In this document: positions 3,606 through 45,369 of the stretch, piece by piece
Numbering within the stretch: position 1 is the stretch's first letter
How the letters are laid out: each line of letters starts with the position of its first letter
Assembly (NCBI GenBank): GCA_002269645.1
Contig: NIVC01000168.1
Span: 248,001 to 312,000, forward strand
Direction: 5' to 3'
From: Macrostomum lignano
Taxonomy: Eukaryota
DNA length: 64,000 nt
The notes under the pieces: generated by a model
Seen by the model: only the letters and a program-made list of their open reading frames with translations
The model's database searches: none
What the model was told of the DNA's origin: nothing
Translations under genes and position numbers: made by a program

Positions 3606-3646
3606 GTAAGTGGTTTTTAATATTTTATCTATCTATCTATCTATCC

Positions 3647-3679
<33 letters not shown>

Positions 3680-4828: not shown

Positions 4829-7806
<2,978 letters not shown>

Positions 7807-14300: not shown

Positions 14301-17300
14301 TGGCGACCTTTGATTTGGGCCGCTTTGTCAAGCAATTCAGTGACGTCGCGTCGCGAGTAGAAGGCTGAATCGCGGTAGGTCTCGCGTGTAGCGCAGCTGG
14401 GCAACAAAACCAATGTTCCGAAGCAGCGGGGACCTAGACCGGTCTCCAGATCTTCGAGGAATTCGGTCAGCGGAGGCAGCATCAGCGTCATTTCTTCCAA
14501 CGGCTTGTTCGCTGCTGCATTCGATTGAATAAATTAATGGGAGAGCATGCGTTTATATGCGATTTGAGATTTTTTAGTCTAAGACAAACTGCAAAGGACT
14601 AATTCTGAAGTAGACTATTTACTACAACACCAAAGTATCAAACGAACCTGTGTCCGATTTTTGTTGCTGCTGATTATTTTCTAGTTGCTCCTCTTGTTGA
14701 ACTTCGTCAGCCGAAGCGTTACGGGCGGCTGCCGAGGCAGCCAAAAACTCTTCAATGCCTGCGAGCAGTCGATCCGGTCTGAGCAGCTTCAACAGCAGCA
14801 GATCGCACAGAAGTAAAACTCTCGGCTCGAGATCATCGCGCTGACTAGTTCGCCTTGAACTGAGCGCTGCCAGCGTAGCGCTTTCGGCTGCTCCTGTGCA
14901 AAATTTACTCCAGAAGGAGTCCTCATCCTTAGCCACGGCCTCGTGCACAGTCGACCAGGGTCCGTCTAAGCTGCTGAGTGCAACAATGTCATCCCATCGA
15001 TCGGCTGGGCAGAAAACTGGACGCTGAAGTCCACTGGTATCTGCTGGGATGGAGCTTCGAATGCCCCTGTCCGAGTACGCTGAAACCAGGAAAAAGGACT
15101 TCTAAAAAACCGAGACCATCAAGCCAACTGCCGAATAAGTTAGTTTGCAGAAAGGTTTTGGGCAGCCAGTAAGCTAGCAGTTATGGATATTTATACAAAC
15201 ACGCACTCCCTCAGCGTGCACTGCGGTCTGATTTGAGAGTCAGACGGACCACCCGCAAAGCTACTTCCCCCCACCTACTGACTACCGAGCCAACTCACCT
15301 TCAAACAGAAAGTCCAAGTACCCATCTGGAATTCCTGTCACACGCGGTAGCTCTGTCAGCCGAAGTAGCAGACCGAAGAGCAGCCGATCCTCGTGAAACA
15401 GTGACGGTCCGAACCGATGATAGACACCGTTGCGAAGGCGCGTCAGCGCTTTGTCGGTCCAACCGTCTGGAGGCTCTGAAGCGTCTTGCTGCTGCTGCTC
15501 TGGCTGACTCTGCTCATATCCATCTTCAGCTGACTTTTCGCCCGTTTCGTTGTTTTCGTCGTTGGCTGTTTTTTCGTCTCGCTTCTGTAGCTGTTTCTCA
15601 GGTTTCGCAAGCAGCTCAGCTTCGTCGAATTCAATTTCAGTCTCTAGCTCGTCATCTTCGTTGGAGCTAGCCGCTGCTGCTGCGCTAGCGGCTGCAGCTG
15701 CTGATGCTTCGAGTTCGGCAGCAGCAGCTGCCTCTTCGGCATCTGGTGGCAGCACGCGTCGAGAGCGAAGAGAGCCGCGTTTAGCCAGGTAAGCTTCAAG
15801 CGGTTGCAGAAGCTCCACGCGCCTGCCAGCAGCTCGACCAGTGATTTCTTGCATGAGACGGTCGCGCTGCTCAGTGGCTTTAGCCGAGAGCACCTCCTGG
15901 ACAAAAGCTTCGTCGTCTGCGAAGAGAAAACATAGGAAGTTGTGGGTTTATGAGGTATATTTTTTCTAACTAAGTAGCCTTTCATTAAATAATGTATGGA
16001 AAGTAAGATAAATAATGCTTACTCTCTTCTCCTTCTAAAATTTTGTAAGCAGCTTCATCTGACGGCCCCTCGTCGCCTTGGATGGACTTGCGACGTTCCT
16101 CTGCCGTCGCCTTCGACTCGTCCTGTTTAGATACCGATTTGGCAGTTTTTTTCTTGACCAGCGTTTTCTTCAAACTGCCCGATTCCATCACCTCTTCGAA
16201 GTCTTCCGGCAGAGGTTCACCATCAGGGTCAACAGCCAGGTCGAATAGTCGCAGGAATTCATGTAGTGGATAGCGGTACTCAAACTGGAGCACACCGAGG
16301 CCGCGCAGCGCATTGTACACGTCGGCTGCAGCGGCACCGAGACCGGCGGCCAAATCGCGACGCCGTTCAACGCCCGATGCACGTCGTTGCTCGCACCTAG
16401 TAGCGGCAGATACGGCGTCGATTCGATTGGCGGTGTCACTCATCGCTTTCATGCTGTCCTCACTCCACAGAGATTGAGAGTTCAGAGCCCCAGCTAGTTG
16501 GCTGCGTATCCGACGGACCAGGGCAGCCAGAAGGACTCGCAGTCTGGCTACTCGGTCAAGCGACGTCGCACGTTCCGCCAACTGGTCTGGCCAGAGTTTT
16601 GCAAAGGCGCGACGTTTCAATGTCTCGCCAAGACTTTCGCGCGACGCAACGCAATTAACCAAAGTCAGCTGGCTGCTGAAGTCTGGGCTGAGTAGGCGCT
16701 GCTGGGTGGCACCGGTGGCGAACATGGGAAGGAAATTGCGGCCGCAGAGCATCTTGCGCTGGTAAAAACGGATCCGTCGGCTCTCTGAAAATACAGGTTG
16801 AGACCATGCACTGGCGATGCTATTATAGAATTTATTTTACAATACGAGGTACAAACTAAACGGATCTGTTTATTTGGTTCAATAGTTAGTTATTGTAATA
16901 AATAAGAAAAACGGGTATGATGAGATAATTATACGCCTGTTCAAGAAAATCTTGGAGCCCAATTCGTGCGTTTAAAATTGATCGTTACCTGGTTCATCCT
17001 GGCCGAATGGGTTTCGCATGTTCATGAAGTGAACCAGCGGCTCAAAAAGATTGTCCGAATTATCGTTCAAGTTGTACATTAGAAGAGGCCGGCCTTCAGT
17101 GATAGCGCGTCGAACTTCGTCGAGAACTGTGGTCTCTCGTCTGCAAGGTGGTTGTAAACAACTATTTAGAAACATAAGTTGGATTAAAACAAAAACAGAC
17201 TTAAAAACTTTTTGCAGCCTAAGTAAACCTTTGATTCATGTCGATTCGGACAAGATCAGCAGCTGTCTCTGTGGTGAGCAGGTGCTTCAACTCCTGTTTG

Positions 17301-20300
17301 CGACCTCGGCTGTGCGGATCGATAAAGCACACCGGGCGATCGTTAGAAGCGCTGATGATTGCCGCATTGATCAGCTGGTGTGCGCTTAAGTCTGAAGAAA
17401 AGTGAAAACAACATTGCAAATTTTCCCTGCTAAATCCAAATTTATAGCCAACAGTGATTCGAACTAACCTTGTCTGTACCAGCACTGAGCAGTTGCTTCT
17501 CCGACAATAACGAAGCACAGAGCCTGGTAATAACGGTACAAACGGCTGCGTGACCAAACGCCCCTCTTTCCATCGGTTTCCAACGCTTCAGCTGCAGTCG
17601 AGGACATCAAAGAAGATGGTGCCCTCTCCTCATTGGTGGCTCGTCTAGATCGCCGTGTTGGACTTGCTCGTGGAGTTTCTTCGACTTGATCTTGTTCCTG
17701 CTGCTTGAGCTTCTCATCTTGTTCTTCACCATCATTTGGCTCTTTTGCAGCGCCCTGTTTCTGACCTTCAGATTCGTCTTCGTCTTTGTCGAGATCGCGA
17801 CCTTCGGCGGCCTCGACATCACCACGAGCTCGTTCCTTCTCACCGATCTCCTCTTTGCGCGCCTTCTCTAACTCGGCATCCTTTTCCTCATCTTCGTCTT
17901 CATCCAGATCGTCTTCTTCATCACCTTCATCGAGAGTCTTCTCGGCAGCGCCGAAGTGAAAAAGAATTTCTCGCCCACTAATTGGGTCCACCGAATCAAT
18001 AGCCAGCTGAAGGCCGCGCTCTTGCAGACACTCTGGCCAGACCTCTGTGAGCACTTGCTGTCGGAACTCCTGTTGGAACCGACCCAGATAAGTCACCAAG
18101 CCGGCTGCAACTGCACATGCGCCAGGTATAGCGCGGACTCGATCGACAAATGAGCGACATGTGCGTCGACACTTGCGCAACTCTTGGCGCATGATTCGAC
18201 GAAGCTTCTTAGCTGTGGCTAGCATCTCCTCCATCTTGCGCGTCTTCTCGTCTTGACTCTTCTTGTCGATCGTGGCTTCTTCAAAACCGACAGCAAGCTC
18301 TTTTAAGCGAGCTTCTAAAGCGATACGCTTCTGCTCCAGCGCAACGTTGCGAGTCTCCGCTTCTGCGACGCGCTTTGCAGTCTCTTCCATTCGTCGGTGC
18401 AGCGGGCGAACTCGTGTTGTGCATCATGTCTTGATAGCGCGCAACGCCGCCGATCCACTTGGCCAGTNNNNNNNNNNNNNNNNNNNNNNNNNNNNNNNNN
18501 NNNNNNNNNNNNNNNNNNNNNNNNNNNNNNNNNNNNNNNNNNNNNNNNNNNNNNNNNNNNNNNNNNNNNNNNNNNNNNNNNNNNNNNNNNNNNNNNNNNN
18601 NNNNNNNNNNNNNNNNNNNNNNNNNNNNNNNNNNNNNNNNNNNNNNNNNNNNNNNNNNNNNNNNNNNNNNNNNNNNNNNNNNNNNNNNNNNNNNNNNNNN
18701 NNNNNNNNNNNNNNNNNNNNNNNNNNNNNNNNNNNNNNNNNNNNNNNNNNNNNNNNNNNNNNNNNNNNNTTTTCCTGCTGTATCTGGGTGAGGGTCGCCT
18801 CTGCTTTTTGATGCTCTTGCGCAACTAGCGCGTGCCTGGTAGCCGCAAGAGCGCAGAACTTTTCTACGAACTTGCTGTACGACGTATTGTTTACGTCGAT
18901 GAGGCAGGCCGGTTGGCTTTTCCTGGCTGAGTTGTCCGACGCCGCTGAGCTCAAACAGGCGCGTCGCAGCGCCGAATGCATCGAAGCCAATAAATGAGCG
19001 AGGTTTTCTCGGATCAGCGGATCCTTAAGCCAGTCTATGGACTCCAGATGGTAGGCAGCATGCTCTACTAGCTGGTTGGGGTGCCAGTGCTGTAGCCAGA
19101 TAAAGTTGATGGTGCTAATGAGCACAGGGAACTGCTGGCAGAGTCGGTGGAACGGCTGTTCAGCGTCAGTAACAATTAGACAGATGCGGAAGTTGCGACG
19201 TACTCCTCTAGAGAAAGAGAAATGGGAGCGTCGATTTTAATGATTTACTGTAAGCTACTGGTAGTAGATTTTAATGATTTACTGTAAGCTACTGGTAGTA
19301 GATTTTAATGATTTACTGTAAGCTACTGGTAGTAGATTTTAATGATTTACTGTAAGCTACTGGTAGTAGATTTTAATGATTTACTGTAAGCTACTGGTAG
19401 TAGATTTTAATGATTTACTGTAAGCTACTGGTAGTAGATTTTAATGATTTACTGTAAGCTACTGGTAGTAGATTTTAATGATTTACTGTAAGCTACTGGT
19501 AGCGAATCGCCAAGATTCTTACCTGAGGAAAAACTCCCAGGCTACTTCTCGATTGTAAGTTAGCCCAGCCTGTGCCACGTCGGTCCGTACCGAGTTGACG
19601 ATTTTAGTCTGCTCCTCCGGCGAGAACAGGTGGTTAATATTGCCGTGGATGATGAACTCCGACAGGTAGACAAACAGGCTGTCCTCGAGGATTTCGTGAT
19701 CACGCAGGAGGAACATCAGCTTTTCATTCTAAAATAATGTAATATAGGTAAAATGAGCTTGAACACACTGATAGGGTTTTTATTGTAAGCTTCGAAAATC
19801 TATAAACAAGAGCAGAAATAGAAAATTTGTACTAATTTGAGGTTGCCCGCTAACCAATAACAAACTACAGCAAAGTAGCTCATATTGAAGAATTACTCCA
19901 CTATGATAGACCCGTTATATAAGAGAGCATTTCGTAGCAATAACTGGTCATACGTGACAAAGGCAGGGTTGTAAACAACAATATAAACGTGCACCACACA
20001 AATATGTGCATCGATGTAGCTTGCAGAAGGTATAGTGATAGACGAAAAACAATGGAAGAGCCAGTTGACACTCGAGCAGTGGGAGGCACACTTATAGCCA
20101 ATGAATTCATATGGCAGAGCTGTTTGGGTTTGTATCTAGCCAATCACATTACCAGTGGGTCATTTATCCGGTGCCTTTTGTCAATAGTTGACTCAACATT
20201 TAGGCTCTCCTTAAATTATCGACAAGAAATTGGCAAGCAATAGGCAAACAGGTTTTTGTAGTACAATTTTTTGTTGGAAATATAGTCACTACTTCAAGCA

Positions 20301-23300
20301 GAGCCCAAGCGCCTATTTTTAAAGGAAATAGTTGAAACAAAAATAAAGTATTTTTCATTGTACCCTCGTACCTTGCAGTAGGTACTCTCGGATTAAAAAA
20401 AAGTGAATGCGTTAACGAAAAACCCGGAAAAAACAAACAAATGCAAAGTTCAGCTGCAAACAGAAATTATGCAGCAATAAGTACTAAGCAAAAGCAAGCA
20501 TCTTGCAAATGAACAAAAAGCCGGATAGATAGAGAGTTAAATTATCGAATAAATGGTATATCTTATAAAGGTTGTTTTCCTATAATTTTTTTTCTCAAAA
20601 AACAGACCGTCACGACACCACCGCTCGAGTCTTCTACTCGAGACTCTAATTCGTCCTGGAAACCGCAATGCAAATAGAAATTTTGTGCATTGAGGTGTTA
20701 AGGTATGTGTTAACCTTTATCTTTGGTTATATCGTTCCAAATCACGAATAGCTGAACTGTTGTACTAATTAAAACATTTTTTATTTAACACAGTAGACTC
20801 AAGCAATAAAGAGTATAAAGAGTCGTCCAAGAATCGCTGTATTGGCGTTTTAATTTTCTAATAATTAGCCAGAGACCCAACTCAGTGACCCTAAAGTGAC
20901 TTTAGCACGCCTTAAATATGATTTTTCGGCCCCGGAGTAATTTCAGAGTCGCAAACAAGAAAATTCTTTAAAGTGATTGTTTGGCGACTCTGTGGCGACT
21001 TACAATTTACTTCGTATTGTAACGTGACATTTCGTCGTTTTAGAGTTCGATGCGGATTTAAATTAATAAATCAAGGAGCATACGTCAGCTTTTCCAGCTG
21101 ATGGATAAGTTTCAAATTTAAATGTAATTAGGGGCAATTGTGTATAAAACTACTATAATCGCAAAGTCAGGACCTGAATTGAGAGTAGGTTCAGCGAGTA
21201 AAACAAAAAGTTCATATTAGCTTTATAAATTCTCACCATATCTTTGTGAGAAAGTTTAGATACACAAAACTTTCTGAAGTATTTCAAAACTGACAATTAA
21301 TTAATAATGACATTTCAAATAAAAAATATTTCTCACCTTGACGCCAGCATTGGTGTAAGCTGCCACCAAATCTCTTTTGAACTGTTCAACCTTGTTGTTG
21401 CCCTCGGATGTGAGACTAGCAGGCGTGGACTGGATAACCTTGAAGCCAGCCAGGTGGGCAGCTAGTCGAGCCAACAATGCCGAAATACCCGGATTGCCTT
21501 CGGCAACTACAGCGATGTGGCCGAAGTTGTGCGGCGACAGCAGGGTCCGAGCGATGCGCGAAACCTCGGCTAGCGTGCGCTGGCGAGGAAAAGAGCGGGG
21601 ATGGAAGCACTCTGCACAAGGTAGAAAGTTAGAAAATCTTAACCAACCCTATTCGTGGCTAGCTTATTGTTTTAGAGGCAGGGGCTGCGTGCACTCTGGC
21701 GCACTTTAAGCGACATTGTCACTTAGGCACGCAAGAGCAGGCACACAAGCGTACGCAGTCATACGCACGGCACATACTTACACAGGAGTGTACAGCGGCC
21801 CTAACTTTATTTCTATTCAGGCATGTACACTTCACTGTGTCTTGGGGGGTTGGCACAAGCCGAGATTCCAATTTAGTCCCAAATTTATGTGACTGATTGG
21901 AATCGAGCCTGGGCCGCTGGCACATCAGAACACTAGGCTACGGGCCCTGTGGCTATCCAAATAATGTTCAATGTTTACAATATTCTATAATAAGAGGCTT
22001 AAAAAGGTCGATCTGAGTTTTTCTTGATGAAAATGCAAATCAGCTTTCGCAGGTTTAGGATACCTTTTGATTCAGTCAAGGTTATTCAAGGTTATTCATC
22101 TGTATCTCGGTTTGAATTTATTCTTTCTGATTATTAATATTATTTTTAATGTACTTTTTAATATAAACCTACCTGCCAAGTTCCAAAACCAAAATTTCAA
22201 AGCAAAGAAAACGAAAAGAAAGTGAAAATTACATTATACAGTGGAAGACGAATAGTTGGATTATTCTTATTAAACTCGGCGATCGCGTCAGTGATCAGCT
22301 CGCGCAGTCGATCGTTGCTAGACACGATGGCGTAGCCGTCGCCCCAGGTCCAATCTGGATCGTTTTGAGTCTTCGTGCTGATTGCGGACACAAGACCGCT
22401 GTCTTGCAAAGCTATGCTCGAGCATAGCGGCGGCTTTGGCTGCAGTAGAATCTCCATCTGTGATATTTGAAGAGAAATGACTTACTAAGAAGGCCGCGTT
22501 TGTTTCATAAAAATTTACATCTATTGAGAAAAAGGACTTCAAACTCACAAGTTCATCAGCCAGTTTCTGAAATAATAAAAAGGAAGATTAGAATGTTCTT
22601 AAACTTGTTTTTGGTAAATACTCAGAAAATAACTATTTACACGGGAGTTGTGGGCACCCTGGTGCAACGCCTTCAGTGACAACCAAGCGCGCCAATACTG
22701 TAGACAGAGTCACACACACGCTCACACAGGGTGTACAGGGGCCTTGACTTTCTAATCGTCAGGCATGTACATTCTCTGTGCCTTGGGGTTGACCCTTATG
22801 GATTTGAATTGCACGACAACCCCAAGGTCAAAGTTTTGCACAAGCCTCAATTTAATTTGGCCTAGCAGGGGAGTCCAATCACGGATCATAACGCTGAGCT
22901 GCTCTGCACAACTGGTAAATGCGCAATTAAAAAAATCCGTATATAAACGCGTAAGATTGCTTACGTATTCCTCCGCAAACTGTTTCTTCACGGCGTTGGC
23001 AAAGGCTCGCCTGTACCGATCCTTGTCGACGTAGTCAACCATGCGTTCGGCGAACACCCAGTCGCATTCGTTGCGCCACAATTGCAGAAGTGGCTTTTTC
23101 TGCACGTCGCTGTTCAACGATTGGCAGAGGTTGCGGAAAACGGTGCTCAGAGTTCGCAGCGAGAACACGTAGTGACTGCGACGAGCCGTTGGTAGGAACA
23201 TCGAACGGAGGTTCTCCTGTCGAAAGAAAATTACGTAATGTTATTTTTGCAGCAATTAAAGGAACTTGCGCAATAAACTTTAGAATGTTTCATCAACATT

Positions 23301-26300
23301 TCTTTTCAAAAAGAACGAATTAATTACTTTCAGGTATGTTTGCTATCCTATTTCAGACTTTTAGTGCTCGAAATTTGTATCATAAACTGATGCAGAACAT
23401 CAAATTTTCGATTCAGTAAATTCTTAAAACCCTCGAATTAAAAATCAACTATACCCGAATTTACCTGCAAATCCACTGTAACCCGAACCAGTTGATCCAG
23501 CAGCGATCGAACCGATCGATCTGGCCCGTAGCTGTGCATGACGCGAATCTCCTCGGGCGATAGCGCCGTCTCATTGTGCTGAAAGAAGTGCGCCATTATC
23601 ATCGTGGAGAACAAGCGGCACTGCTCAGCTTGGCTGGGGTAATTGACCGCCAGCACGCTGAAATGATTCACAAATCGCTGCTTGACAGTGGCGCCGCCGG
23701 CTATGCCTGGGTTGAGTGCGGCGATGAAGTGCAGCGACTTCAATGTTCGCCAGGATTGTGTTGCTGCAAAATGGTGCCCGCCTTCGTCGATGAGCTGACG
23801 AAGCAGTTCACTGGAAGTCTGACGTCCCGCATCGTCTGTGGCGGCTAGATTAAGATCGTCAACAAAGCACATGAGTCGCTTGCCGCCGAGAGGTACATAC
23901 AGCTTGCCGTCCTTCCATTCGAGCTTCTCGTCGAGCCTCTCGGTAATGAGGCGAGCATTTGTGTAACGGTTCGCGTACACGCTGACGTTCAGAATTTCGG
24001 ACACTTCACTGCTGCAGACGGTACGGATGCGCTCGCCGACAATGGCCGACTTGCCGCAGCCGCGAGGCCCAACCAGCAGCACCGGGGTGCCCAAGTCAGA
24101 CAGGAGGCTCAGACAGTAACTCACCGCCTGACTAGACGGTGTCTGGACAAAAGCGTGCGTTGGAATGCCGGAATTGATGGTGCCCTGATACATAGGTATC
24201 AGCTCTTGCCAGGGCTGCCACTCTAGCCGATCCACATCCAAGTAGTATTCGAATATTGAGCCTTGCTGCGGTATTCTCTCGTTTTCAAACGTAGCTCGCC
24301 ACCATTCGCTCATTTTTCGCTGACTATCTTGAGTTAAATTGGCGCCGAAGCCCCACACAGCGGCAAACACGACCAGCTGCTCATAGTCTTCGTCGCGCAG
24401 TTGATGCAGCGAAGCTGAATTGATGAGACTTTCCAACAGCCGTTGTGTTGTACGCAACGAACTCTCGTACGATTGGTTGATAAGTCGCTCAAGCCTTGGT
24501 AGTCCTCCCATCGGCCGTCCCAGCGTTGGCTGCTTCATGGCCTCGGTGACGAACCCGTGCAGTTTCGGCAAATACTTGTCAAACACAGTCATCAAGCTCA
24601 ACGACTCATCGCCAGGACGATCCTCCAGCCAGCGCGTTAGAAACGGTGGCACCGGGGAGGAATCGGGACCGACGAACATGAGTTGCACTCTCGAGGCCAG
24701 GCCTGGACTGCAGTCCTCTAGAGTTTCCATCTCCCAGACGACGCGAATAGGCTCTGGAAAGATAAGCTTCTGACCACTAAGAAGTGTGATGAAGTTTGGT
24801 TTATCTAACAGGCTCTGGATAACTTCCCACTGGGCTGCGCTGCAGGTACCGTCAAGTCGCAGCAAATTGCGCCGAGTAGAATCGTTGCTACTAGTTTCGT
24901 CAGTTGAGCATGACGTAAACTGACTCAAAAGTGCCCCTAGCACACTAGGTTGCCATCGGCCTTTTTCAAATGCTCCAACGAGCTCTTCGGCTGAGAGAGC
25001 ACCCGGATAGAGACACTGTACTTGCATCGGCACTTGCATTAGCTGCATTAGGCGCTCGTAAGCGCGGAATACTGTTGTCTTGCCAACGCCGCTTGGTCCA
25101 ACGATGGCAACGGCGTTTGAGTGTTCCGCCATGTTGTAAAGCTTTGTCAAGCTGCACTCGAAAGGGACGCTGTTGATGAAACGGTCCCCGTTCAACACAT
25201 GATCGAGAGCCGCCACCAGGCTTAGAGGTGTCGTTTCGACTGCAGCACTTTCGGGCGTTCTCTTCGCACCAGCGGTGGTAGACGCAGCCGTAGCTGGCGG
25301 CTTTGCATCTGCTCCATCTTCTGACTTGGGCGTCTCAAAGCGCTCTTCAGCACTGTTAGCCTCGCGAAAGTCTAAGCTCGGAGGGCAGCCGGGGAATAAC
25401 TCAACGGCCAGCTGCTCAAAAAGCTGACCCTCAGACTGGCGTCGAAATGCAGGCGCTAGCAGGTCCCGCAGGCCGAGCAGTAGACTGTGGCTTTGAACTT
25501 CTGGCAAAACATCCTCTGGTAGTTTAGTCAGGGGCTCGGGGCGTGGCTCCGACTGAGCCATCAGGCTGCTCATCTCCGTTCGCATGCGCTGGTTTGTCAC
25601 AAACTGATTGTGCATGTGAACGTTGATTTTGTTGAGGTGCAACTCCACCTGCCTCGGATAGTGCCGCTCCGCCGCATCCACGACTTGGCTGAGGAACTGT
25701 AGTGTGCGGAACTCCCGGTCGCGATCAGCTGAAATTTCAATTTATTAATGAATTTTTTCTTTGAGTACTAGATTTCGAATATAATTTTACTTCAATCAGT
25801 CTACATCAATTGTTACGCGCATTGCACTGATTAAGCCCTGTCACTTACCGAAGGAGTCTTCCAGACGGTCGCAAATGCTTCTGTAACTAGCCAAAAAGTC
25901 CACAAGTCTATCAGCCAGTAGTTTAGGATGCTTAAAACCAATTAAGTCTAGTTTAGCTTCAGCCTGAGCGCGTTGGGTGAAGACACTCGGTTCCGTGATG
26001 CGCAGAGGCACAAGTCGAGTGAGCAGCGAAATAGGCAGAGCGGCTGCAAAATCTTCAAATTCGATGGGTCTCACAGCGAACGGTACAGTATCGCTATGTC
26101 GCTTCTGAGACCGGGTGTTACCTCCCAAAGTGCAGAAACATGCGCTGTTCTCTGTCATGACTGCTTCTTGCTCATCGTCTTGCTGTTGCTGCTTTGAAGG
26201 AGCGTCCTCTCCGTCATCTACTGAGTCTTTGGGCGCTTGAGACGCAGCCGCCGGAGCGACATTAACTTGTGTCAGCAAGCGAGCCAGCTTGTTCGCCGAC

Positions 26301-29300
26301 TCCAGACAGAGAGAGTCCACCGAACGAAGGCACAACCAGATGCCGTCCGCTGTAGTTAAGCCTTCAAAAGCGTACTCAAGACTGAGGTCTGGCAGCTCCG
26401 GTGAGCAGGCGACGCAGTAGAGCGGACGTCCGGCAGCCACAGCGAGATTCCACAATGCCGCGAACAATTCCATGCTACCCCCAGAGCTTCCACTGTCACT
26501 ATTGTCCGAATGGCAGAGCGTTGGGAATCGATGCTTAGTATTATAGATCAGATTGCCCGCCACATTAGTGCTCTGAGGACAGCGCTCAGCTGAACCGATG
26601 TACTCCCAGCCGTAGGAGAGACTTTGTCCGCAACAGTGCAACTGCACTGAGCCGTCTTCGGAGGACCGGGTGTAGCGCAACTCGCCGGCCCACTGGTCTA
26701 GGAAGCGCTGCCGCACGTCTGCCTCACTGCCGCTGTTTTCAGTGTCTGGTGCCTGTGGAAAACGTAATTTATAACCTTATGAACTTTTCTGTACTGTCTA
26801 AGTAAACTCATGACTAAAATACTATAGGCATGTTACCTCATCTGCGTTCTCATGTCCATCTTTCTCCTGCCCGGTCCACGCGTCAATAAGGGCAATCTGG
26901 TAGCCAAACAGGAGAATGAGCTGGCGCAGCTTAGCCTGCTGTGCCGGAACTAGCAATAGCCTGGCATTAGCTCGAATCTTCACCATCGGATCTTCTACGG
27001 GCTTGTCGCTGAAGTCAAATTGATTCACTTCGTCGATGGTTTCTGCAGCAGGCTCCTGAGCTGCTGATTCGTTGTCTTCTGGCTTCTCTTCATCGCCTTG
27101 TCCTTCGATTGGTTCACCTGTCTCATCATCATCGCCAGATGCTGGCTTCTCCGCGTCGTCTTTGGCGGCTTCATTGCCTTCTTCTGTTGGTTCGTCAGCA
27201 TCGGGCTCTGCGTGAGCAGCTGCGCCTGAAGCCGCTGGTGTCGCTGCACTTGCGGCTCTCTCTCGAATGGTGTCCGCCAGACTGCGGTCCTCCGCGGCCT
27301 CATCCTCCAGATCCATATATTCCTCATCGTCGTCCGAATCGGCATCGTTCTCTTCCTCGCCTTCATCGCGCGGCTGCCTCAATCGGACGGCTTTTTTTGA
27401 CGCGGCTCTCGAGATGGCCGCCGCCTCAGCTGCTGCTGCTCGCTCCTTAGCTTTGATGGACTCGGCTTCAGCGATAATTCTGTCGAAAAGTATAAGCAAG
27501 CGTCGACAGAGGTCCTGGCTTCCTCGCAGGCCAGATCGAACCTTGCCGAGCTGTTCCTTCCAGCCATCGCTGGCGTAGGCAGCTTGATCGACTTGAGTTG
27601 AAAAGTCAATCTGAGCTCGCAGGTGGCACACTTCCGCTACGCTGTCCAGCAGCTGGCTTGCTGACAACTCAAGCTTTTCCGAAGCCTCATCTTGCTGCTG
27701 CTGCTGCTGCTTATTTCCCTTGGGGGCTTCCAGTCTTTCCAGCGCGTCGTTAAACACGGAACTGATCGGCTCACCAGCCATCATTGCTAGCGCCTCCCTG
27801 TCGTTCTTCGGCAACCGACGCTTTAGAATGGACTGAAGCTGCTGCTGCTTTTCTTGCTGCTGCTTCTGATAAGCTGACTGCGACTGTGACTGAGGCCTCG
27901 AATTAACTTCTTTTTTGCTTCCTTCAACGACTTCATTCTCTTCTTCTTCTTCTTCTGGTGTCGGCTCGTCATTGTGCTGTTGCTTCGTCTCGAAATTTTC
28001 ATATTCGTCTGCGTCGGGTGACTTCGCCGCCTCACCGAAAGTAGCGGCGAGTTGCGTTTTGAGGGCGGCTCGAATCGCCTCCAGTAGATCGCCAAGCCAA
28101 CTGCAGTCGAGGCCGCGGCAGACTACTGGGCTGGTCAGCGGCAGTTCTTCGCCAAGTCGGCTGCGAATCCCAGTCACCTCGCAGACGGCCGGATTGTCCT
28201 CCTGTCTGGTGAACACCAGCTCGCCGACGTTCTCGAACAGTTTGCCAATGTGACGGTTTAACAGCTCCGCGTCGTGGCAACTGCCGTACACCAGGAACAG
28301 ATCCTCGGCTGACAGGAAGTTGAACCGAGGAAACTTGGCGCGTATCTGGCCGTCTAGATAGGATACCAGCTCTTCCCGGCACTTGCGAAGCAGGCTGTCC
28401 ATGCGGTCGAGGATTGGCACGATGTCTGTTGAAGGTGACAGGTTGAGGTAGTCAGCGAGGCATTCGTTTTCTGCTAGATAGAGGTTTGTCCCAGAAATGT
28501 CAGTGTGACAGAGGTATCGATCGGTACATGATGACGGGACAGAGGTACCGATACCCGGAGCATTGGACTAAAGGAAACATTGGTAAGGTGCCGATTTGAC
28601 ACAGGTATCGATATCGGGATGGGGGCGATGATGTTGGTAATATGCTGCAAAGGAACCGACAATGACAGAAGCAGCCAAGTGACCGGGGTAACAATGCTAA
28701 TTTCATAAAGACAATCTACACAAGACGGTAAAGAAATTCTGCATCATAAGCTCATGTTCTACTTACACTTCCGATTGCAGCATTGCAATAAATTCTGATT
28801 CTTCTTAGTCGCCTGCATCAGCCGTTTAAAATCGGCGCTAGCAATTTGAAATTTGGCGTACTCAGGCAGAGCAGAGAATGCCTTCTCCGACTCGTAGATG
28901 TTCTGCATCTGTAACCACTTGTCTTGCACGCGCAGCCACAGGATGAGCACTGTCTCAATGTGCTGCAAAGTTCTCTGCCATTTACCAATGTCATCTACGT
29001 AGCTTCCAGCAGTTGAGCTGGCCAGCATTTCAGCCAGCGAGGCCTGGTGCTCAGCCAGCTCAGCGAACACTTTGTCGGTGTTGTCCAACAAGTAGATCTG
29101 AGTATCGGATTCCATCTCGACACCAATGAGGCTGCTTGGGAGCGAGGCGATGCTCTGCATGCCGGCACTGCGACCGGACATCCGGCTGATCGAAGTTCGT
29201 CTGGCCGAACCGGCACCTGAGCCCTGCGGATTCGAAGAAGAGATTAGAATCTTTTTATGCGATTTAAATTTGATTAATATGCAATTAATACGTTTCTGAG

Positions 29301-32300
29301 TTAGTTTCACGACGAATAAAACAAAAATTCACAATACAGGATACGTGAAATACACAATAAACAATAGTTTTGATGAGTTTTTTTCTCGGTAAAAGGGTTA
29401 CAGGCGAATTCTAGAGTACACACAAAGTAAAGATTGACAATATCACTACTGATTTACTCGTATTACATTTAGTTAGTACAGAGCGTGACCATCATTTGCT
29501 TCAGATTTTCTTCAGATCTGATTAGTAACAAATGGATTGTACAACGCTGAAAAGTGTGGCAATTCACTAAGGACAAGTTGTGGAACATTTTGCTATTAAA
29601 ATATGCTTTACAAATTTTTATCTCCTTCTATTAATCAATCAGTTTACGAGCAAAATTAATCTTTTTCCTTGTCTGATTACTTGTCTAAGCTTTCGTCTCG
29701 AAACGTGTGGCTCAATTGAGGCTACTGTCATCTGAAATAGAAATCAGATAGCATAGCAGAAGTGCATGAATGGTAGGTATGTAAGTGTCTTAGGCGTTTG
29801 AAATTTCAGCTTTTATAGAGAGATTTAAACAAAAAGCAATGGAGGTTGTGACCGATAAAATATTAACTATCCAAAGAAAAAAGACAACTTACAGAAAGCT
29901 ACATGCAGCTCAGAGAAAAGACGTGTTGTGGAAAGAGTCTTTGTACATAAACTAAGGTTTTGTTCCCTTTTCTGACTTTTTCAACAACAAGTTACTATAG
30001 TTACTCAAGTCATAAAGCAAAACTGAAGCGAGATGGCAGTTTCTCGTTTTGAATCTAGCACTAATGCCCCAGTGGTCCAGGCTTACATTCGGCCCTCGTC
30101 CGTCGGCGTCTTCTGAGCTTTCGCCGACCGGCGTCATGTAGTGCAGCTTCAAGTCGAACACCTTGCTCATCCACAGGTTGTCAAAGTTTTTGATCGCCTC
30201 CTCGATCTCCTTGTCACTTTTCGCTCGTTTCACAATCGATGTCACGTGATCCGCATTGTCTGAAATTTGGGGATAACTTTTTAGTGAAGCATAAATATTC
30301 GCAGTAGGGTTCTTGCCACCCTGGTGCAGCCAGCTGTGATGCAATTCTGTCCATTTCACTGACTACTGAGCACATACAAGCGCGCAGATAGAGAACTGTT
30401 ACTGGCAATTTACTCACTTTGCAGTCCCAATTTGAGCAGTTCTCCAAGCGTCATGACCTCGAGTGACTCGGAGTTGATCTGGATCACACCGCCAGTCAGC
30501 CGAACCAGCTGCTTCCAGTGCCGCGGCTTCATAGCCGGATCTTTCAGCTGGTCGATGAGTTCCAGCACACGTTTGATTGCCGCGATCTCGCCGCAGATTC
30601 CCTCGAATACGTCCCAGTCGTGGCACTGGTTCGGCAGCCGTTCTAACCTTGCCAGTTGGGTGCAGCAGGCCTCGATCAGCTGCGATGGACTCAGCCGCTT
30701 CCATCGGAGCTTTTTCCAGTCAGCCTGCTCGGAGAGCAGCAATCGGACCGTTTCCCAGGTCATCTTCAAATTGTCCAGCGTTTCCCGACACTCGGTAATC
30801 ATTTCGAACTCGATGACGTCACTACCGAGAAGAGTTTGCACCTCTCGAAGATCCTGAGCCTCTTCTTCAACGTCGCGCAGAGTGCGCGAGAAGTCAGCGA
30901 GCAACTCCTGAACTTTTGACAGCAGGCAGGAATAGTTGAAGACGTTCGACTCGAACAGATCGTCCGACAGCGACTGCACGTTGGACTGGAAGTTGACCAA
31001 ATCAGTCTCGATAGTTTTTCGCTCGTTGTGAATTCTGGGGCCGAGCTTCTGCTTGGCGGAGATGACTTTGTTCTTCAACTGTTGCCAGCGATGAACGCTC
31101 ACGAGACCGTCTGGATCGCGAATCTCCTCCGGCAGCTCGCATTCGTACGTGTCTAATAGTCGAATAGTTCGTCGCATAACGTCAAATCTGGCGTCCATTT
31201 CCACCTGCTTGGATGAAATTTCATTGAACAGCCGCATCAGCCGCATGAAGCTGTAAGTGTCCTTCTCCTGGCCACTGATCCTTTCAATCTGAGGCTCGAT
31301 TTTTTGCAGAAATTCGTCCAACTCGCGTAGTGTTACAAGCACCTGCTCAGTCAGGTAAGACGTGAATTGGTACACCCATTTATTGGCTAGTGTAATCAGC
31401 ACTTGCTTCAACGGCCGCATGTTGATTAGTAGCCAACCCTGCAGGGTGAAAAAGTAGAGAAGCACGTGAAAGTTTTAGATAGGATAATCCTGGATAATAC
31501 TCGTAAATTAACATCGCAACAGAACTTTACCTGATTGCTGCTATCTGGCATCTCCTGGATTTCCTGTCTAGCCTCCAGGTAGAGTTCGATTTCGTCCTGG
31601 AATTCGGCTAGCGACGGCACACAAGTGCCAGCTTGGCCAGACGATTTCGGCGTCAGGAAGGCTCGCTCGCCAAGCGAGAGCTCGCCGCCTCCAGCTTCGG
31701 CGTCCATGTTCTCCTCCTGCTGGGCAGTCAAACGCGATCTCACTGAGCTCGGCCTCGATCTGGACGTCTGAAATACCGTCGACGAGGCGTTTTGCATCGA
31801 TCGACTAGGCGTTCGAGCCGGGTTTGGCGATGCTCGACCCTGAAGGAACTGTTGAAAGGTTTCAGCGATATCCGGCACCCATAGGTAGCGATAGTCGTTC
31901 AGGTACTCCACGTACTCGATGCAGTTGGCGGAGTTATTCACCACCGCTTCGAGAATCTTAGCGCGAGCGTCGGTAACTTCGACATCGGCTAGGATCTTGT
32001 CTAGGAACGGCGCTCGCTCCTCCTTAGTTAGTTGATCATCGTTTTCTGGCAGATCGGCCAGTAAGTTTGTTAGGAGACCAGCTCGACTCAGGAAGTCAGT
32101 AATCCAGCTCTGAGCCATCTCTGTGACGCTGCTCTCGTAGCTGAACTCGTCCAATGGCGGTCTGAAGCTGATGCGGCACTGGACCAGGTCAAGTCTGACA
32201 GTCAGGATCGGCGCAGTTGGGTTGTGCGGCCCGGTGAGCCCCGCTAGCGCCAGGCAGTTGGCCATGTTGTCCAGGCTAGTCATGACCGACTCTTTGAGCT

Positions 32301-40287: not shown

Positions 40288-42472
40288 CTAAAATAATATT
40301 GGATATAAAAGTTTCAATACTATATAAGCATCAGCATTATCAGCAGTGAAATATAATTAGATGGCAAAATGCGCAAACAATCTTACTTGTATTCATCTTG
40401 TTCAATGAGATTTTTTGTTTCTGGAATAGTTGCTTGCACCGCGAACTCCAATTTTCTTTCGAACCATTTCACACACTCATCCATCTGGAATTAATATTGG
40501 AATTTCTTATAAGTTTGAAATGCATTATGATAACAAGCGAAGTCACATGGATACAATACTATATGTATATGAAACTATTCTAAACAGCTTTCTTTACTTA
40601 TTTTTTTCTTCATTTTGAAATTACGTGGTCTTTTGCTAGATTGACTAAATTGCAACAATTATGGCATTTACTATCTGAAATTTCAAAATTACTTCGTACA
40701 TATTCATATTAAGACTTCATGACAATCTCATAAAAACCAAAAATTTAATCTGATAGTTCTCTGAATATGTGGGAATAAAGAACGAACTTTATTCGTCTAC
40801 AATTTTTAGGTGTCATGCCTAAAACAGTTTCCAGGAAGTTTATATTAAGAATAAATAATTGAAAAAAACTTTATACTTATCAAAAAGTCGTTTGACAAAA
40901 GCAAGATAAATATAATCTAAAAAGTAATGCCTGCAAGTCTATAATCTAAATAGGCGACCTGAAAACCGAGTAAAATCAGACAAACTTTTGTGAAAGTAGA
41001 AGATATCTGGGCCATCTGGCCCGGTTAAATAAATCCCATTTTGCAAATGACAACATGAGCTCGAGTTTCAAGTCTTTGAAAAAATGTAACTATAACTTGC
41101 TAATGTTAAATCTGCGCGAATCTGTTTTGCTAAGGAGCCACGGTTGTAAAACAAAAATGAAACTAAAGACTCAAGTATCTGGCGATAAATTACAAAATTT
41201 TAAGTAAAGGCTAGATAAATAGCAGATAATTATTTTTTAAATTAATAAAATGTAAACATAAAAATAAAACTATTTTCCGCTTTTCACTTTTGCAGATTCT
41301 AAGAAAATGCTTTCTGCAGAACATGTGTAAAGTGTCTGTAAGCCACCTGTCGGCATTTTAACGAATTTTGTAGTATTTTTTGTCTTTCGTATTCTGTAAG
41401 ACAATGCTAATAAATACTAGGTTCGAGGTAAGGTACATAGTTTGAGGAAAGCCAGTAAAACGAAAGCAAAAACGAACATTCGCATTTTTCCTTAGTTATA
41501 CCAAATTACAATATATTAATCTTCGCGCGACATGTTTCGCCGAACAATCAGCATCTTTAGACAATAATATAGGTGCAGAGAGATAGTAAATTAGTAAATT
41601 TTTAAATTCTAATAAGCCAAAATGATGCAAGTATGGGTAGCAGAGTTAGATGGCCCTAAATAATAAGCTCCAGTTTACTTTGTTTATAAACTATAACTAA
41701 TAGTAATACTAGACTAGGTTATAATTTATATAAAATATATTTTTTCTTTTTGAATTGGCTTGTACTCGTAGGCGTCGTTGCTCATAATTTCTAAACTGCT
41801 AAAATTCTTAAGTAAATTAGTACAGCTTTTTATTAAATATTATAATGCAAGTTTGCAACTAAACAAAATACTTCATGTGCAGTTTTTTAAAATTGAGATA
41901 CAAATTGCATCCAAGTTGATAGGCCTACTAATGCAATTATTTTAATAAATATAATACAATTAAGAATGTATTGTTTAAAAACTATTTTATTAGAAAGCAG
42001 TTAATTTTCTCTCAGATTTGTTTTATGGACAAAGAAAAAAAGAGAAGAGAGGAAGAGTGAGAGTCAGACAGGAGAGGAAAAATAAAAAGAGATGGGAGAA
42101 AAAAGGAGAAGAGAAAGAAAAGCAAAGAGAAAAGAAAAGAAAAAAAGAAGAAAATAAAGATAAGACATAAACCTTGACAAGGCCAGATTTCTATTATAAA
42201 GTTTCAAAGAACTTAAGGGCCATATAGAGAGCCTTTGTGGGCTGAATGCAACCTATAGGCTAGAGCTAGCTAACACTTGAACTTAAATGCTTTATTTTTA
42301 TTGACCTAGATTATTCAAAATCTTAATTCCTTTATAACTAGAATATTACTCATACTTGATTTTTAAATAAATGTTTAGTTCTAATTAAAAATTCATTTAC
42401 TCTAATCTGACAAAACATTTCTGCCAATTGTTTGCATATCAAGATTGTAAAAAGTCTTTTTCGAAAAAAAAT

Positions 42473-45335: not shown

Positions 45336-45369
<34 letters not shown>

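What the first reader, a model, noticed from the sequence alone, without database searches (positions are those of the whole stretch)
21337..26752. Full-length dynein heavy chain with a dead AAA1 site: candidate 'pseudo-dynein'
Seen: after the well-placed YGWEYIG, the position of the near-invariant AAA1 Walker A (GPAGTGKT) reads HSDNSDSGSSGGSME (~26468-26517). Walker B (WGCFDEFNR) reads WLCLRSVDS (~26311-26345), and sensor I (TMNP) reads CTLG. The AAA4 P-loop (GVGGSGK) reads VAEGNPGI. AAA2 (GPSGVGKT, 25076-25099) and AAA3 (GPRGCGKS, ~24048-24070; FVDDLN) are retained. Established: AAA1 is the primary hydrolytic site, and its Walker A/B mutations abolish dynein motility. Inference: at least 29 long, phase-consistent exons with a complete beta-type tail look maintained, so this may be a non-motile heavy chain acting as scaffold, brake, spacer or nucleotide sensor in the axoneme. 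A divergent heavy-chain-like protein (DNHD1) is known in vertebrates, but whether this is related is unknown.
Basis: partly seen in the sequence, partly recalled or inferred. Interest (0 to 1): 0.85.

Follow-up and report, generated by a model that had tools for sequence, protein, structure and literature searches.

The report
Flatworm dynein heavy chain, dead motor
This is a real, conserved and selectively maintained flatworm (Macrostomum lignano) dynein heavy chain whose main ATP-burning site is destroyed; it belongs to an animal gene family catalogued in 2016 but never studied, so it is most likely a non-motile "pseudo-dynein" rather than a new kind of gene.

Summary
On the minus strand (about 40484 to 12244) lies a dynein heavy chain of roughly 5,700 residues. 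Its AAA1 module lacks Walker A, Walker B and sensor I, and its AAA4 P-loop is gone. The AAA2 and AAA3 P-loops are intact. The window holds no alternative AAA1 exon.

The locus is Macrostomum lignano contig NIVC01000168.1. Its annotated models are truncated.

The gene is not a one-off. Collinear relatives of 5,254-5,930 residues occur in gar, lungfish and salamander; shorter or partial models occur in bichirs, sturgeons, coelacanth and an acorn worm. Where AAA1 is covered (gar, lungfish, salamander, acorn worm), Walker B and sensor I are lost. Gar, lungfish and salamander also carry EG(C/N)P in place of the AAA4 P-loop.

The tail is outer-arm beta type. AAA5 is enlarged, and the relatives carry acidic C-terminal extensions. 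These are the hallmarks of Kollmar's (2016) class-13 dyneins, whose ATP sites were never analysed.

It is not DNAHX, which has an alpha-type tail and a disrupted stalk. It is probably not DNHD1.

A second genomic copy gives dN/dS of about 0.11 and shows a canonical, strongly conserved stalk and microtubule-binding domain.

Caveats: an assembly gap removes the microtubule-binding domain, and two 1-nt frame breaks are present.

The parts
12244..40484 (-). Whole dynein heavy chain gene (about 28-30 exons, about 5,700 codons), from the Met start to the stop/donor at 12244
   Evidence: GenBank model PAA89001.1 (P0151) maps exactly onto 22 exons from 40484 to 18284. Relatives from Pleurodeles, Protopterus and Lepisosteus are collinear from 40484 to 12439.
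31531..40484 (-). Tail exons (DHC_N1), outer-arm beta type
   Evidence: Pfam DHC_N1 3.3e-35. PDB phmmer of residues 1-1196: Chlamydomonas ODA beta 9.5e-95, Tetrahymena beta 6e-82, DNAH9 2.5e-48, against DNAH5 1.7e-25 and Chlamydomonas gamma 3.5e-19.
26837..31438 (-). Linker exons (DHC_N2) with long acidic/Gln-rich insertions in exon 28423-26837
   Evidence: Pfam DHC_N2 5.7e-22; ORF translation; 40-43% identity to the vertebrate relatives over 31438-30419.
25850..26752 (-). AAA1 exon with degenerate catalytic site: Walker A position 26468-26512, Walker B position 26312-26338, sensor I position 26105-26137
   Evidence: Pfam AAA_6 scores only 13 bits, E 0.05. No alternative AAA1 exon.
23465..25729 (-). 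AAA2-AAA3 exon: AAA2 Walker A GPSGVGKT 25076-25099; AAA3 Walker A GPRGCGKS 24047-24070; AAA3 Walker B FVDDLN 23849-23866
   Evidence: Pfam AAA_7 1.5e-40 and Dynein_AAA_lid 3e-19. Best PDB matches DNAH9 9.7e-58 and DNAH17 2.3e-57. Motif alignment.
21337..23216 (-). AAA3-small and AAA4 exons; AAA4 P-loop replaced by the family-specific EGNP (VAEGNPGI 21484-21507)
   Evidence: Pfam AAA_8 4.2e-5. EG[CN]P occupies the same column in Pleurodeles, Protopterus and Lepisosteus.
17470..19728 (-). AAA4-small, stalk (CC1, microtubule-binding domain, CC2) and start of AAA5. Contains assembly gap 18468-18769 and a 1-nt frame break at 18415.
   Evidence: The second copy L002 has one uninterrupted 697-aa ORF here, with a canonical-length stalk and microtubule-binding domain. 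Indel located.
15300..17391 (-). AAA5 exons, enlarged by acidic low-complexity insertions (boundaries approximate)
   Evidence: ORFs and weak collinear tblastn matches; splice-site scoring; relatives show 80-110-aa insertions relative to DNAH11.
13758..15079 (-). AAA6 exons (boundaries approximate); 1-nt frame break at 14214
   Evidence: L002 reads through as one 260-aa ORF. Indel located.
12245..13578 (-). C-sequence exon (Dynein_C); the terminal TGA at 12244 overlaps a consensus splice donor CAG|GTGACT
   Evidence: Pfam Dynein_C 2e-9; tblastn to relatives 13062-12439; donor context.
8313..11823 (-). Possible low-complexity acidic C-terminal extension (ORFs 11823-11017 and 10847-8313); unverified, and could be a separate gene
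   Evidence: Same-strand open frames rich in D/E/S with phase-compatible splice candidates. Relatives carry 149-556-aa acidic or Ser-rich C-terminal extensions.

Best explanation
The gene is the Macrostomum lignano member of an animal family of dynein heavy chains derived from the outer-arm beta chain. It most probably corresponds to Kollmar's class-13 (DHC13). The family has given up AAA1 catalysis.

Shown here:
- a beta-type tail and linker;
- AAA1 without Walker A, Walker B or sensor I;
- intact AAA2 and AAA3 P-loops;
- an AAA4 P-loop replaced by a conserved EG(C/N)P motif;
- a canonical-length, strongly conserved stalk and microtubule-binding domain;
- an enlarged AAA5;
- purifying selection between two genomic copies.

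Inferred: with no P-loop, the flatworm AAA1 can neither hydrolyse nor probably bind ATP, so the ring cannot run the ATP-driven powerstroke. The protein would therefore act as a non-motile heavy chain. Its beta-type tail would assemble it with outer-arm-type intermediate and light chains and a partner heavy chain on the A-tubule. Its conserved microtubule-binding domain would hold the neighbouring B-tubule. In that picture it is a static or nucleotide-modulated (AAA2/AAA3) cross-bridge or regulator, not a force generator. Macrostomorpha sperm have no flagella, so it probably works in somatic motile cilia (epidermis, protonephridia).
For: Identity and locus: P0151 (PAA89001.1) maps 100% to the window. 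L001 is identical to the window and lies on NIVC01000168.1.

Family: the closest relatives by exhaustive HMMER search are 5,254-5,930-aa proteins named 'dynein beta chain-like', 'DNAH9-like' or 'DNAH17-like'. They come from Lepisosteus, Protopterus, Pleurodeles, Erpetoichthys/Polypterus, Acipenser, Latimeria and Saccoglossus. The full-length ones (Lepisosteus, Protopterus, Pleurodeles) are collinear with the whole gene. An NJ clade of the flatworm, Pleurodeles, Protopterus and Lepisosteus sequences plus one metagenome protein has bootstrap 83.

Shared derived characters:
- AAA1 Walker B and sensor I are lost in every relative that covers AAA1;
- Walker A is GPEGSGKR, GPEATGKK, GPERIGKK or GPNWSGRR in relatives and absent in the flatworm;
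- AAA4 carries EG[CN]P;
- a 4-residue insertion follows the AAA3 Walker A.

Beta-type tail.

Constraint has shifted away from AAA1. AAA1-large identity between the flatworm and the vertebrate relatives is 24%, against 38-41% for AAA3 and AAA4. In canonical chains AAA1-large is the best conserved region, at 68%. Pfam AAA_6 scores run 454 bits (DNAH11), 140 and 113 bits (vertebrate relatives), 13 bits (flatworm).

Selection: 36 synonymous and 13 non-synonymous differences over 1,819 codons, dN/dS 0.11.

Stalk and microtubule-binding domain: canonical length, with the motif KGAKRQMAN[IL]DRFL[DE]EL shared with vertebrates.

Class-13 hallmarks are taken from PMC5100056: tail like class 4, longer AAA5, low-complexity C-terminal extension. 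These are seen.

Aflagellate sperm in Macrostomorpha: PMC4446793.
Against: - No reference class-13, DNAHX or DNHD1 sequence could be obtained. Class assignment therefore rests on published descriptors, not on a joint tree.
- The window copy has an assembly gap and two 1-nt frame breaks. The second copy has its own frame breaks. One or both copies could therefore be very recent pseudogenes.
- No expression data were available, and the gene identifiers appear in no searchable paper.
- The vertebrate relatives keep the Walker A lysine and may bind ATP at AAA1. The locked state may thus differ between lineages.
- The mechanistic steps (rigor-like cross-bridge, partner chain, somatic cilia) are inference only.
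- The C-terminal third of the gene model is approximate.
Confidence: 0.6

Rival explanations
1. This particular copy is a recently inactivated pseudogene. Macrostomum lignano carries several near-identical copies, so redundancy would allow decay.
For: Relative to the second copy L002, the window has 1-nt indels at 18415 and 14214 that break the frame. The annotated models are truncated. There is no expression evidence.
Against: Each copy is intact where the other is broken, and all differences are 1-2-nt indels, as expected from long-read consensus errors. No in-frame stop occurs in about 5,700 codons. dN/dS between copies is 0.11, not about 1. Deep conservation (38-42% identity to vertebrates in the linker, AAA3, AAA4 and stalk) shows the lineage kept the gene functional until at least very recently.
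Confidence: 0.12
2. It is the flatworm orthologue of DNAHX (the non-motile heavy chain of sea-urchin 'dynein-X', probably Kollmar class-12).
For: Both are unusually long (DNAHX is 5,272 aa), carry many disordered insertions, have a degenerate AAA1, and show a similar patchy distribution that omits amniotes.
Against: DNAHX branches from the DNAH5/8-type chain and is annotated DNAH8-like. Here the tail matches beta chains at 1e-95 against 1e-25 for DNAH5, and relatives are annotated beta-, DNAH9- or DNAH17-like. DNAHX has a disrupted stalk and microtubule-binding domain and keeps Walker B. This family has a canonical, conserved stalk and microtubule-binding domain and lacks Walker B.
Confidence: 0.04
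3. It is a divergent orthologue of DNHD1 (Kollmar class-11).
For: DNHD1 is also an 'orphan' heavy chain with insertions and an AAA1 lacking catalytic Walker B residues. No DNHD1 sequence was available for a direct test.
Against: Kollmar treats classes 11 and 13 as separate, and gives the beta-type tail, long AAA5 and low-complexity C-terminal extension as class-13 features. DNHD1 has human and zebrafish orthologues. Every family member I traced comes from non-teleost fishes, a salamander, an acorn worm or the flatworm, and RefSeq names none of them DNHD1.
Confidence: 0.05
4. It is still a working motor that uses another site (AAA3, or AAA2) as its hydrolytic engine.
For: The AAA2 and AAA3 P-loops and the AAA3 Walker B 'DD' are intact, and AAA3/AAA4 and the stalk are the best conserved motor parts.
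Against: In all studied dyneins the linker swing and microtubule release are driven from AAA1 (established knowledge, restated). The axonemal AAA3 'DD' lacks the catalytic glutamate in canonical chains too. No precedent exists.
Confidence: 0.05

Closest known systems
Class-13 dynein heavy chains (DHC13) of Kollmar 2016, Mol Biol Evol 33:3249 (PMC5100056)
   Same: Restricted to animals. The N-terminal tail is homologous to the class-4 (outer-arm beta) tail. AAA5 is enlarged. A low-complexity C-terminal extension is seen in the relatives and is plausible in the window. Homology to canonical chains in TBLASTN is very low. Cryptophyte orphans sit nearby in trees: a Hanusia protein is next to the clade.
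   Different: No contradiction was found. Membership could not be tested against reference DHC13 sequences. That paper explicitly did not analyse the ATP sites, so the AAA1/AAA4 degeneracy and the conserved microtubule-binding domain reported here are additions.
DNAHX / dynein-X (Chai et al., bioRxiv 10.1101/2025.01.18.633724)
   Same: A long, insertion-rich axonemal heavy-chain paralogue with a degenerate AAA1, proposed to be non-motile. It is patchily distributed and absent from amniotes. It works like the same kind of thing: a catalytically dead dynein.
   Different: DNAHX derives from the DNAH5/8-type chain, has a folded-back, insertion-disrupted stalk and microtubule-binding domain, carries a pre-sensor-II insert in AAA4S, and retains Walker B with ATP bound. 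The present family derives from the beta chain, keeps a canonical conserved stalk and microtubule-binding domain, lacks Walker B in every member that covers AAA1, and lacks the P-loop altogether in the flatworm.
DNHD1 (human orphan heavy chain, Kollmar class-11)
   Same: A divergent heavy chain with a degenerate AAA1 (no catalytic Walker B) and disordered insertions. It is implicated in ciliogenesis rather than beating.
   Different: The phyletic pattern differs (DNHD1 is present in mammals and zebrafish), and Kollmar treats it as a separate class.
Canonical outer-arm beta heavy chains (DNAH9/DNAH11/DNAH17; Chlamydomonas ODA beta)
   Same: They are the best matches for both tail and motor. The domain order is the same, as are the stalk length and the AAA3 'DD' Walker B.
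   Different: Canonical chains have GPAGTGKT, CFDEFNR and TMNP in AAA1 and GVGGSGKQ in AAA4; all are lost here. This chain is also about 1,200 residues longer because of insertions.

Membership tests
Dynein heavy chain superfamily | DHC_N1/DHC_N2 tail and linker, AAA modules in dynein order, stalk with microtubule-binding domain, C-sequence | tested here: met
   Pfam DHC_N1, DHC_N2, AAA_7, AAA_lid, AAA_8 and Dynein_C. PDB matches to axonemal chains. Stalk and microtubule-binding domain recovered from the second copy L002.
Canonical outer-arm beta chain (class 4; DNAH9/11/17) | Catalytic AAA1: Walker A GPAGTGKT, Walker B DE, sensor I Asn | tested here: not met
   The flatworm reads SDSGSSGGS, LRSVDS and CTLGGN in those columns. 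Pfam AAA_6 scores 13 bits, against 454 bits for DNAH11.
Kollmar class-13 (DHC13) | N-terminal tail homologous to the class-4 (outer-arm beta) tail | tested here: met
   Tail phmmer: ODA beta chains 9.5e-95 to 6.5e-38; the best non-beta hit is 1.3e-33, DNAH5 1.7e-25.
Kollmar class-13 (DHC13) | Longer AAA5 domain | tested here: met
   Acidic insertions of about 150 aa after CC2, and further ones in exons 16784-15300. Relatives show 80-110-aa insertions relative to DNAH11 in AAA5. The comparison is qualitative.
Kollmar class-13 (DHC13) | Unique low-complexity C-terminal extension | tested here: inconclusive
   Relatives have 149-556 acidic or Ser-rich residues beyond the end of DNAH11. In the window the stop at 12244 overlaps a consensus donor, and acidic ORFs follow on the same strand. 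No transcript evidence is available.
Kollmar class-13 (DHC13) | Restricted to Metazoa | tested here: met
   Named members are a flatworm, an acorn worm, non-teleost ray-finned fishes, coelacanth, lungfish and a salamander. One clade member, P0015, comes from a metagenome of unknown origin.
Kollmar class-13 (DHC13) | Groups with reference DHC13 sequences (CyMoBase) in a motor-domain tree | not testable with these tools
   No reference sequences were reachable. The NJ tree supports only the clade itself (bootstrap 83).
DNAHX (probably class-12) | Closest canonical relative is the DNAH5/8-type outer-arm chain | tested here: not met
   Beta chains are the best matches for both tail and motor.
DNAHX (probably class-12) | Insertions in CC1, CC2 and the microtubule-binding domain that disrupt the stalk | tested here: not met
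   The stalk region is 416 aa here against 409-422 aa in canonical chains, with no large insertions and a conserved microtubule-binding domain. It was read from the second copy L002 because the window has a gap.
DNAHX (probably class-12) | Pre-sensor-II insert (beta-hairpin plus helix) in AAA4 small domain | tested here: inconclusive
   The alignment shows no family-wide insertion in the AAA4 region, only a 9-aa flatworm-specific one. No structure was modelled.
DNHD1 (class-11) | Orthology to human DNHD1 by sequence | not testable with these tools
   No DNHD1 sequence was available. The indirect evidence is against it: RefSeq names of the vertebrate members and the presence of DNHD1 in zebrafish and human.

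The most novel reading that the evidence does not exclude
Class-13 heavy chains are a third, independent lineage of catalytically dead dyneins, derived from the outer-arm beta chain. Unlike DNAHX, they keep a fully conserved microtubule-binding domain. They would be the missing beta-type partner that pairs with the alpha-type DNAHX (class-12) to form a wholly non-motile, outer-arm-like 'dynein-X'; its second head was seen with a canonical stalk but never identified. Their presence under selection in a flatworm with aflagellate sperm and internal fertilisation would mean this complex works in somatic cilia, not only in the sperm of external fertilisers.
Probability: 0.2. Interest if true: 0.75.

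Novelty: new member of a known kind. Interest (0 to 1): 0.55.

Why it matters
Non-motile dynein heavy chains have only just been recognised (DNAHX in 2025, and the reappraisal of DNHD1). What they do in cilia is an open question.

- **A third dead-motor family.** The beta-derived class-13 family also has a dead AAA1, and a dead AAA4 P-loop, across bilaterian animals, while its microtubule-binding domain is under strong constraint. That defines a different design: dead motor, live microtubule grip.
- **A candidate partner for dynein-X.** The family is a concrete candidate for the unidentified second chain of dynein-X, as Kollmar's predicted class-12/class-13 heterodimer implies.
- **A tractable test organism.** Macrostomum lignano is RNAi-tractable and transgenic, and has abundant epidermal cilia but aflagellate sperm. 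It could separate somatic-cilia roles from sperm roles.
- **An annotation fix.** The current GenBank models for this locus miss the C-terminal third of the gene.

Tried and rejected
- **Word-indexed protein searches.** Searches with the AAA1 exon and the AAA2-3 exon returned nothing. A profile of four family members returned only two fragments, from Latimeria and Acipenser. The family census therefore rests on the top 150 hits of one exhaustive HMMER search and is certainly incomplete.
- **Deeper tree placement.** The NJ tree of AAA2-AAA3 does not resolve where the clade attaches. Bootstrap is 36 or less beyond the clade, and long-branch attraction to a cryptophyte and an ichthyosporean protein is likely. 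Descent from the beta chain is argued from the tail instead.
- **C-terminal exon boundaries.** Simple splice-site scoring of the C-terminal exons was ambiguous at several junctions. Boundaries after 17470 are approximate.
- **dN/dS.** The first run had two mis-framed segments and was redone. The N-terminal 3,300 codons are nearly identical between copies and carry no information.
- **Alternative AAA1 exon.** Searched for and not found.
- **Structure prediction.** Not attempted. A single-sequence model would not be informative.
- **Literature on these genes.** A search for the Macrostomum gene identifiers found nothing. A search for later work on DHC11/12/13 found only Chlamydomonas gene names.

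Full report
**Observation**

The gene lies on the minus strand.
- YGWEYIG, 26594-26614;
- HSDNSDSGSSGGSME at the Walker A position, 26468-26512;
- WLCLRSVDS at the Walker B position, 26312-26338;
- FCTLGGNTRSQ where canonical chains read FITMNPGYAGR, 26105-26137;
- GPSGVGKT (AAA2), 25076-25099;
- GPRGCGKS and FVDDLN (AAA3), 24047-24070 and 23849-23866;
- VAEGNPGI where canonical chains read GVGGSGKQ (AAA4), 21484-21507.

phmmer against PDB aligns the AAA1 exon to Chlamydomonas outer-arm alpha and beta chains, with these residues in the motif columns. A MAFFT alignment with canonical chains agrees.

Walker A, Walker B and sensor I all sit in one 903-nt exon (26752-25850). A six-frame motif scan, plus tblastn with six AAA1 modules, finds no other AAA1-like sequence in the 64 kb. 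An alternative catalytic exon within this window is therefore excluded.

The Pfam model of the hydrolytic site (AAA_6) scores 13 bits. Its gathering threshold is 25.2, and a canonical DNAH11 scores 454 bits.

**Source and gene structure**

An exhaustive HMMER search with the AAA2-AAA3 exon found a 100% identical protein. It is a 'hypothetical protein' of the flatworm Macrostomum lignano.

A cluster member of that protein, PAA89001.1 (3,854 aa), maps exactly onto 22 exons from 40484 to 18284. Its locus, GCA_002269645.1 contig NIVC01000168.1, is identical to the window.

The annotated models go wrong at an assembly gap (N run 18468-18769) and miss the rest of the gene. That remainder continues through AAA5, AAA6 and the C-sequence to 12244. 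My estimate is 28-30 exons and about 5,700 codons. Exon boundaries after 17470 are approximate.

**A second genomic copy**

A second copy (L002, contig NIVC01000031.1) is 98-99% identical and has no gap. It supplies three things.

- **The missing stalk.** One uninterrupted 697-aa exon encodes AAA4-small, CC1, the microtubule-binding domain, CC2 and the start of AAA5.
- **Frame breaks in both copies.** The window copy has 1-nt frame breaks at 18415 and 14214. L002 has different ones at 19708-19653, 14948, and 13241/12807. Each copy is intact where the other is broken, and all are 1-2-nt indels, so I read them as long-read consensus errors. I cannot prove that.
- **A selection test.** Over 1,819 aligned codons (19728-12247) there are 36 synonymous and 13 non-synonymous differences, giving dN/dS 0.11. 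The first ~3,300 codons differ at only 3 synonymous sites.

**The family**

The nearest relatives at 30-33% identity are not canonical dyneins. They are long proteins from:
- Lepisosteus (5,254 aa), Protopterus (5,930 aa) and Pleurodeles (5,702 aa);
- the bichirs Erpetoichthys and Polypterus;
- two sturgeons, as fragments;
- Latimeria, as a fragment;
- the acorn worm Saccoglossus, as a partial model.

RefSeq names them 'dynein beta chain-like', 'DNAH9-like', 'DNAH17-like' or 'uncharacterized'. The full-length ones are collinear with the flatworm gene from the first exon to the C-sequence. They match it at 40-47% in the linker region, where a teleost DNAH11 matches at about 22%.

An NJ tree of AAA2-AAA3 groups the flatworm, Pleurodeles, Protopterus and Lepisosteus sequences, plus one metagenome protein, with bootstrap 83. 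Deeper placement is unresolved.

**Shared derived features of the family**

- **AAA1 Walker B.** It reads NG, NG, DS, NN or RS instead of DE.
- **Sensor I.** The Asn is absent in all.
- **AAA1 Walker A.** It decays in steps: GPEGSGKR, GPEATGKK, GPERIGKK, GPNWSGRR, and no P-loop at all in the flatworm.
- **AAA4 P-loop.** It is replaced by a conserved EG(C/N)P.
- **AAA3.** A 4-residue insertion follows the Walker A.
- **Retained motifs.** The AAA2 and AAA3 Walker A motifs, and the axonemal-type AAA3 Walker B 'DD', are kept.

The conservation profile is inverted relative to canonical chains. There, AAA1-large is the best conserved region, at 68% mean pairwise identity. Between the flatworm and its vertebrate relatives it is 24%, against 38-41% for AAA3 and AAA4.

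Pfam AAA_6 scores form a series: 454 bits (DNAH11), 140 and 113 bits (salamander, gar), 13 bits (flatworm).

The stalk has canonical length, 416 aa against 409-422 aa. The microtubule-binding domain is one of the best conserved parts of the family, with KGAKRQMAN[IL]DRFL[DE]EL shared by flatworm and vertebrates.

**Comparison with what is known**

*Class 13.* Kollmar (2016, PMC5100056) defined 17 dynein classes. Class-11 is DNHD1. Class-12 has a tail like class-3 (DNAH5/8) and an 'extremely unusual stalk'. Class-13 is metazoan-specific, with a tail like class-4 (outer-arm beta), longer AAA5 domains and unique low-complexity C-terminal extensions. The paper states that the ATP sites were not analysed, and it predicts a class-12/class-13 heterodimer at outer-arm positions. 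I tested the class-13 descriptors as follows.

- **Tail.** It is unambiguously beta type: 9.5e-95 to Chlamydomonas ODA beta against 1.7e-25 to DNAH5.
- **AAA5.** It carries large acidic insertions.
- **C-terminal extension.** Relatives extend 149-556 acidic or Ser-rich residues beyond the end of DNAH11. In the window, the stop at 12244 overlaps a consensus donor (CAG|GTGACT) and is followed by same-strand acidic ORFs. This is suggestive but unverified.
- **Neighbours in the tree.** A cryptophyte (Hanusia) protein sits next to the clade. This echoes Kollmar's note that cryptophyte orphans fall basal to classes 12 and 13.

I could not obtain reference class-13 sequences, so I infer membership from these descriptors rather than from a joint tree.

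*DNAHX.* Chai et al. (bioRxiv 2025) describe a non-motile heavy chain from sea-urchin sperm. It derives from the DNAH5/8-type chain, has a disrupted stalk and microtubule-binding domain, carries an AAA4S insert, and has a degenerate AAA1 that keeps Walker B and holds ATP. Its partner in 'dynein-X' has a canonical stalk and was not identified. The present family differs on the defining points: a beta-type tail, an intact stalk and no Walker B. It is therefore not DNAHX.

*DNHD1.* It could not be compared directly. It has human and zebrafish orthologues. None of the family members I traced is from a mammal or a teleost, and none carries that name.

**Likely mechanism**

*Shown:* the domain anatomy, the motif states, the conservation pattern and the evidence of selection described above.

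*Inferred:*
- Without a P-loop, a Walker B glutamate or a sensor I, the flatworm AAA1 can neither hydrolyse nor probably bind ATP. The AAA1-driven linker swing and microtubule release cannot then occur.
- The beta-type tail implies assembly with outer-arm intermediate and light chains and a partner heavy chain on the A-tubule.
- The conserved microtubule-binding domain implies that contact with the B-tubule still matters.
- The most economical model is a non-motile, outer-arm-like cross-bridge or regulator, possibly modulated by nucleotide at AAA2 and AAA3.
- In canonical dynein an empty AAA1 corresponds to tight microtubule binding, so the flatworm protein may be rigor-like. The vertebrate members keep the Walker A lysine and might instead be ATP-locked, as DNAHX is.
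- Macrostomorpha have aflagellate sperm (PMC4446793). The site of action in this animal is therefore probably somatic motile cilia. That does not fit a purely sperm-of-external-fertiliser role.

**Verdict**

The 'pseudo-dynein' reading is well supported at the level of sequence and evolution. The gene fits a class catalogued in 2016, and the concept of dead dynein heavy chains is already published. What appears new within the literature I could search is the family-wide loss of the AAA1 and AAA4 sites combined with a conserved microtubule-binding domain, and the extreme state reached in the flatworm. Function remains untested.

Noticed in passing
window 18284-40484 and 12244-18467 (-): The GenBank models for this locus (PAA89001.1, and PAA93228.1 on the paralogous contig) stop at or before the assembly gap. 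They omit the whole AAA5-AAA6-C-sequence third of the gene, and no gene is called over 18284-8281.
   Followed up: yes
L002 (NIVC01000031.1) versus window 46794-9726: A second copy of the whole locus exists, including the neighbouring saccharopine-dehydrogenase-like gene. It is 98-99% identical in the dynein region and 81-97% upstream of it. The first ~3,300 codons are almost identical, but the stalk-to-C-terminus part is about 2% diverged. This suggests recent duplication with partial gene conversion, or collapsed haplotypes.
   Followed up: partly
window 8313-10847 (-) and 11017-11823 (-): Two long same-strand open frames (845 aa and 269 aa) encode Ser/Glu/Asp-rich repeats with no Pfam match. 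They could be the low-complexity C-terminal extension of the dynein or an unannotated separate gene.
   Followed up: partly
window 4756-7826: A microsatellite array of about 3 kb is open in all three plus-strand frames (it reads LSIYLSIY...). GC is 27%, with very strong GC and AT skew.
   Followed up: no
window 35064-35855: A tandem repeat of about 0.8 kb with a 15-nt period lies inside the intron between dynein exons 6 and 7. It reads GAGAS..., LVLAP... or RLWCW... according to frame. Further tandem arrays lie at 42626-43680, 44275-44720 and 55587-56339.
   Followed up: no
window 52769-53671 (+): An uninterrupted 301-aa mariner/Tc1-type transposase ORF (Pfam Transposase_1 5e-22, with HTH_48 and HTH_32 N-terminal domains). 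It is possibly a recently active element.
   Followed up: partly
window 1593-2856 (+): A LINE-type reverse transcriptase fragment (RVT_1 1.9e-18) lies at 1593-2132. Further open frames without a Pfam match lie at 48020-49965 (+).
   Followed up: partly
window 3161-3706 (+): An exon encodes an F5/8 type C / galactose-binding (fucolectin-like) domain (Pfam 8.6e-11).
   Followed up: partly
window 42425-47425 (+), exons e.g. 44836-45432 and 45455-45871: The upstream neighbour is a saccharopine-dehydrogenase-like (SCCPDH-type) gene, annotated with Sacchrp_dh_NADP in the source record. It is divergently oriented to the dynein gene.
   Followed up: partly
window 58553-63721 (+): A multi-exon membrane protein gene with a weak match to the sodium:neurotransmitter symporter family (SNF, 2.4e-4), ending in a Gln-rich C-terminus.
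   Followed up: partly
proteins P0010, P0040, P0064, P0114, P0136: Several other heavy chains among the top 150 hits also have degenerate AAA1 motifs. They come from Chromosphaera perkinsii, the cryptophyte Hanusia phi and unassigned metagenome contigs. Loss of AAA1 catalysis in dynein paralogues may therefore be recurrent across eukaryotes.
   Followed up: partly
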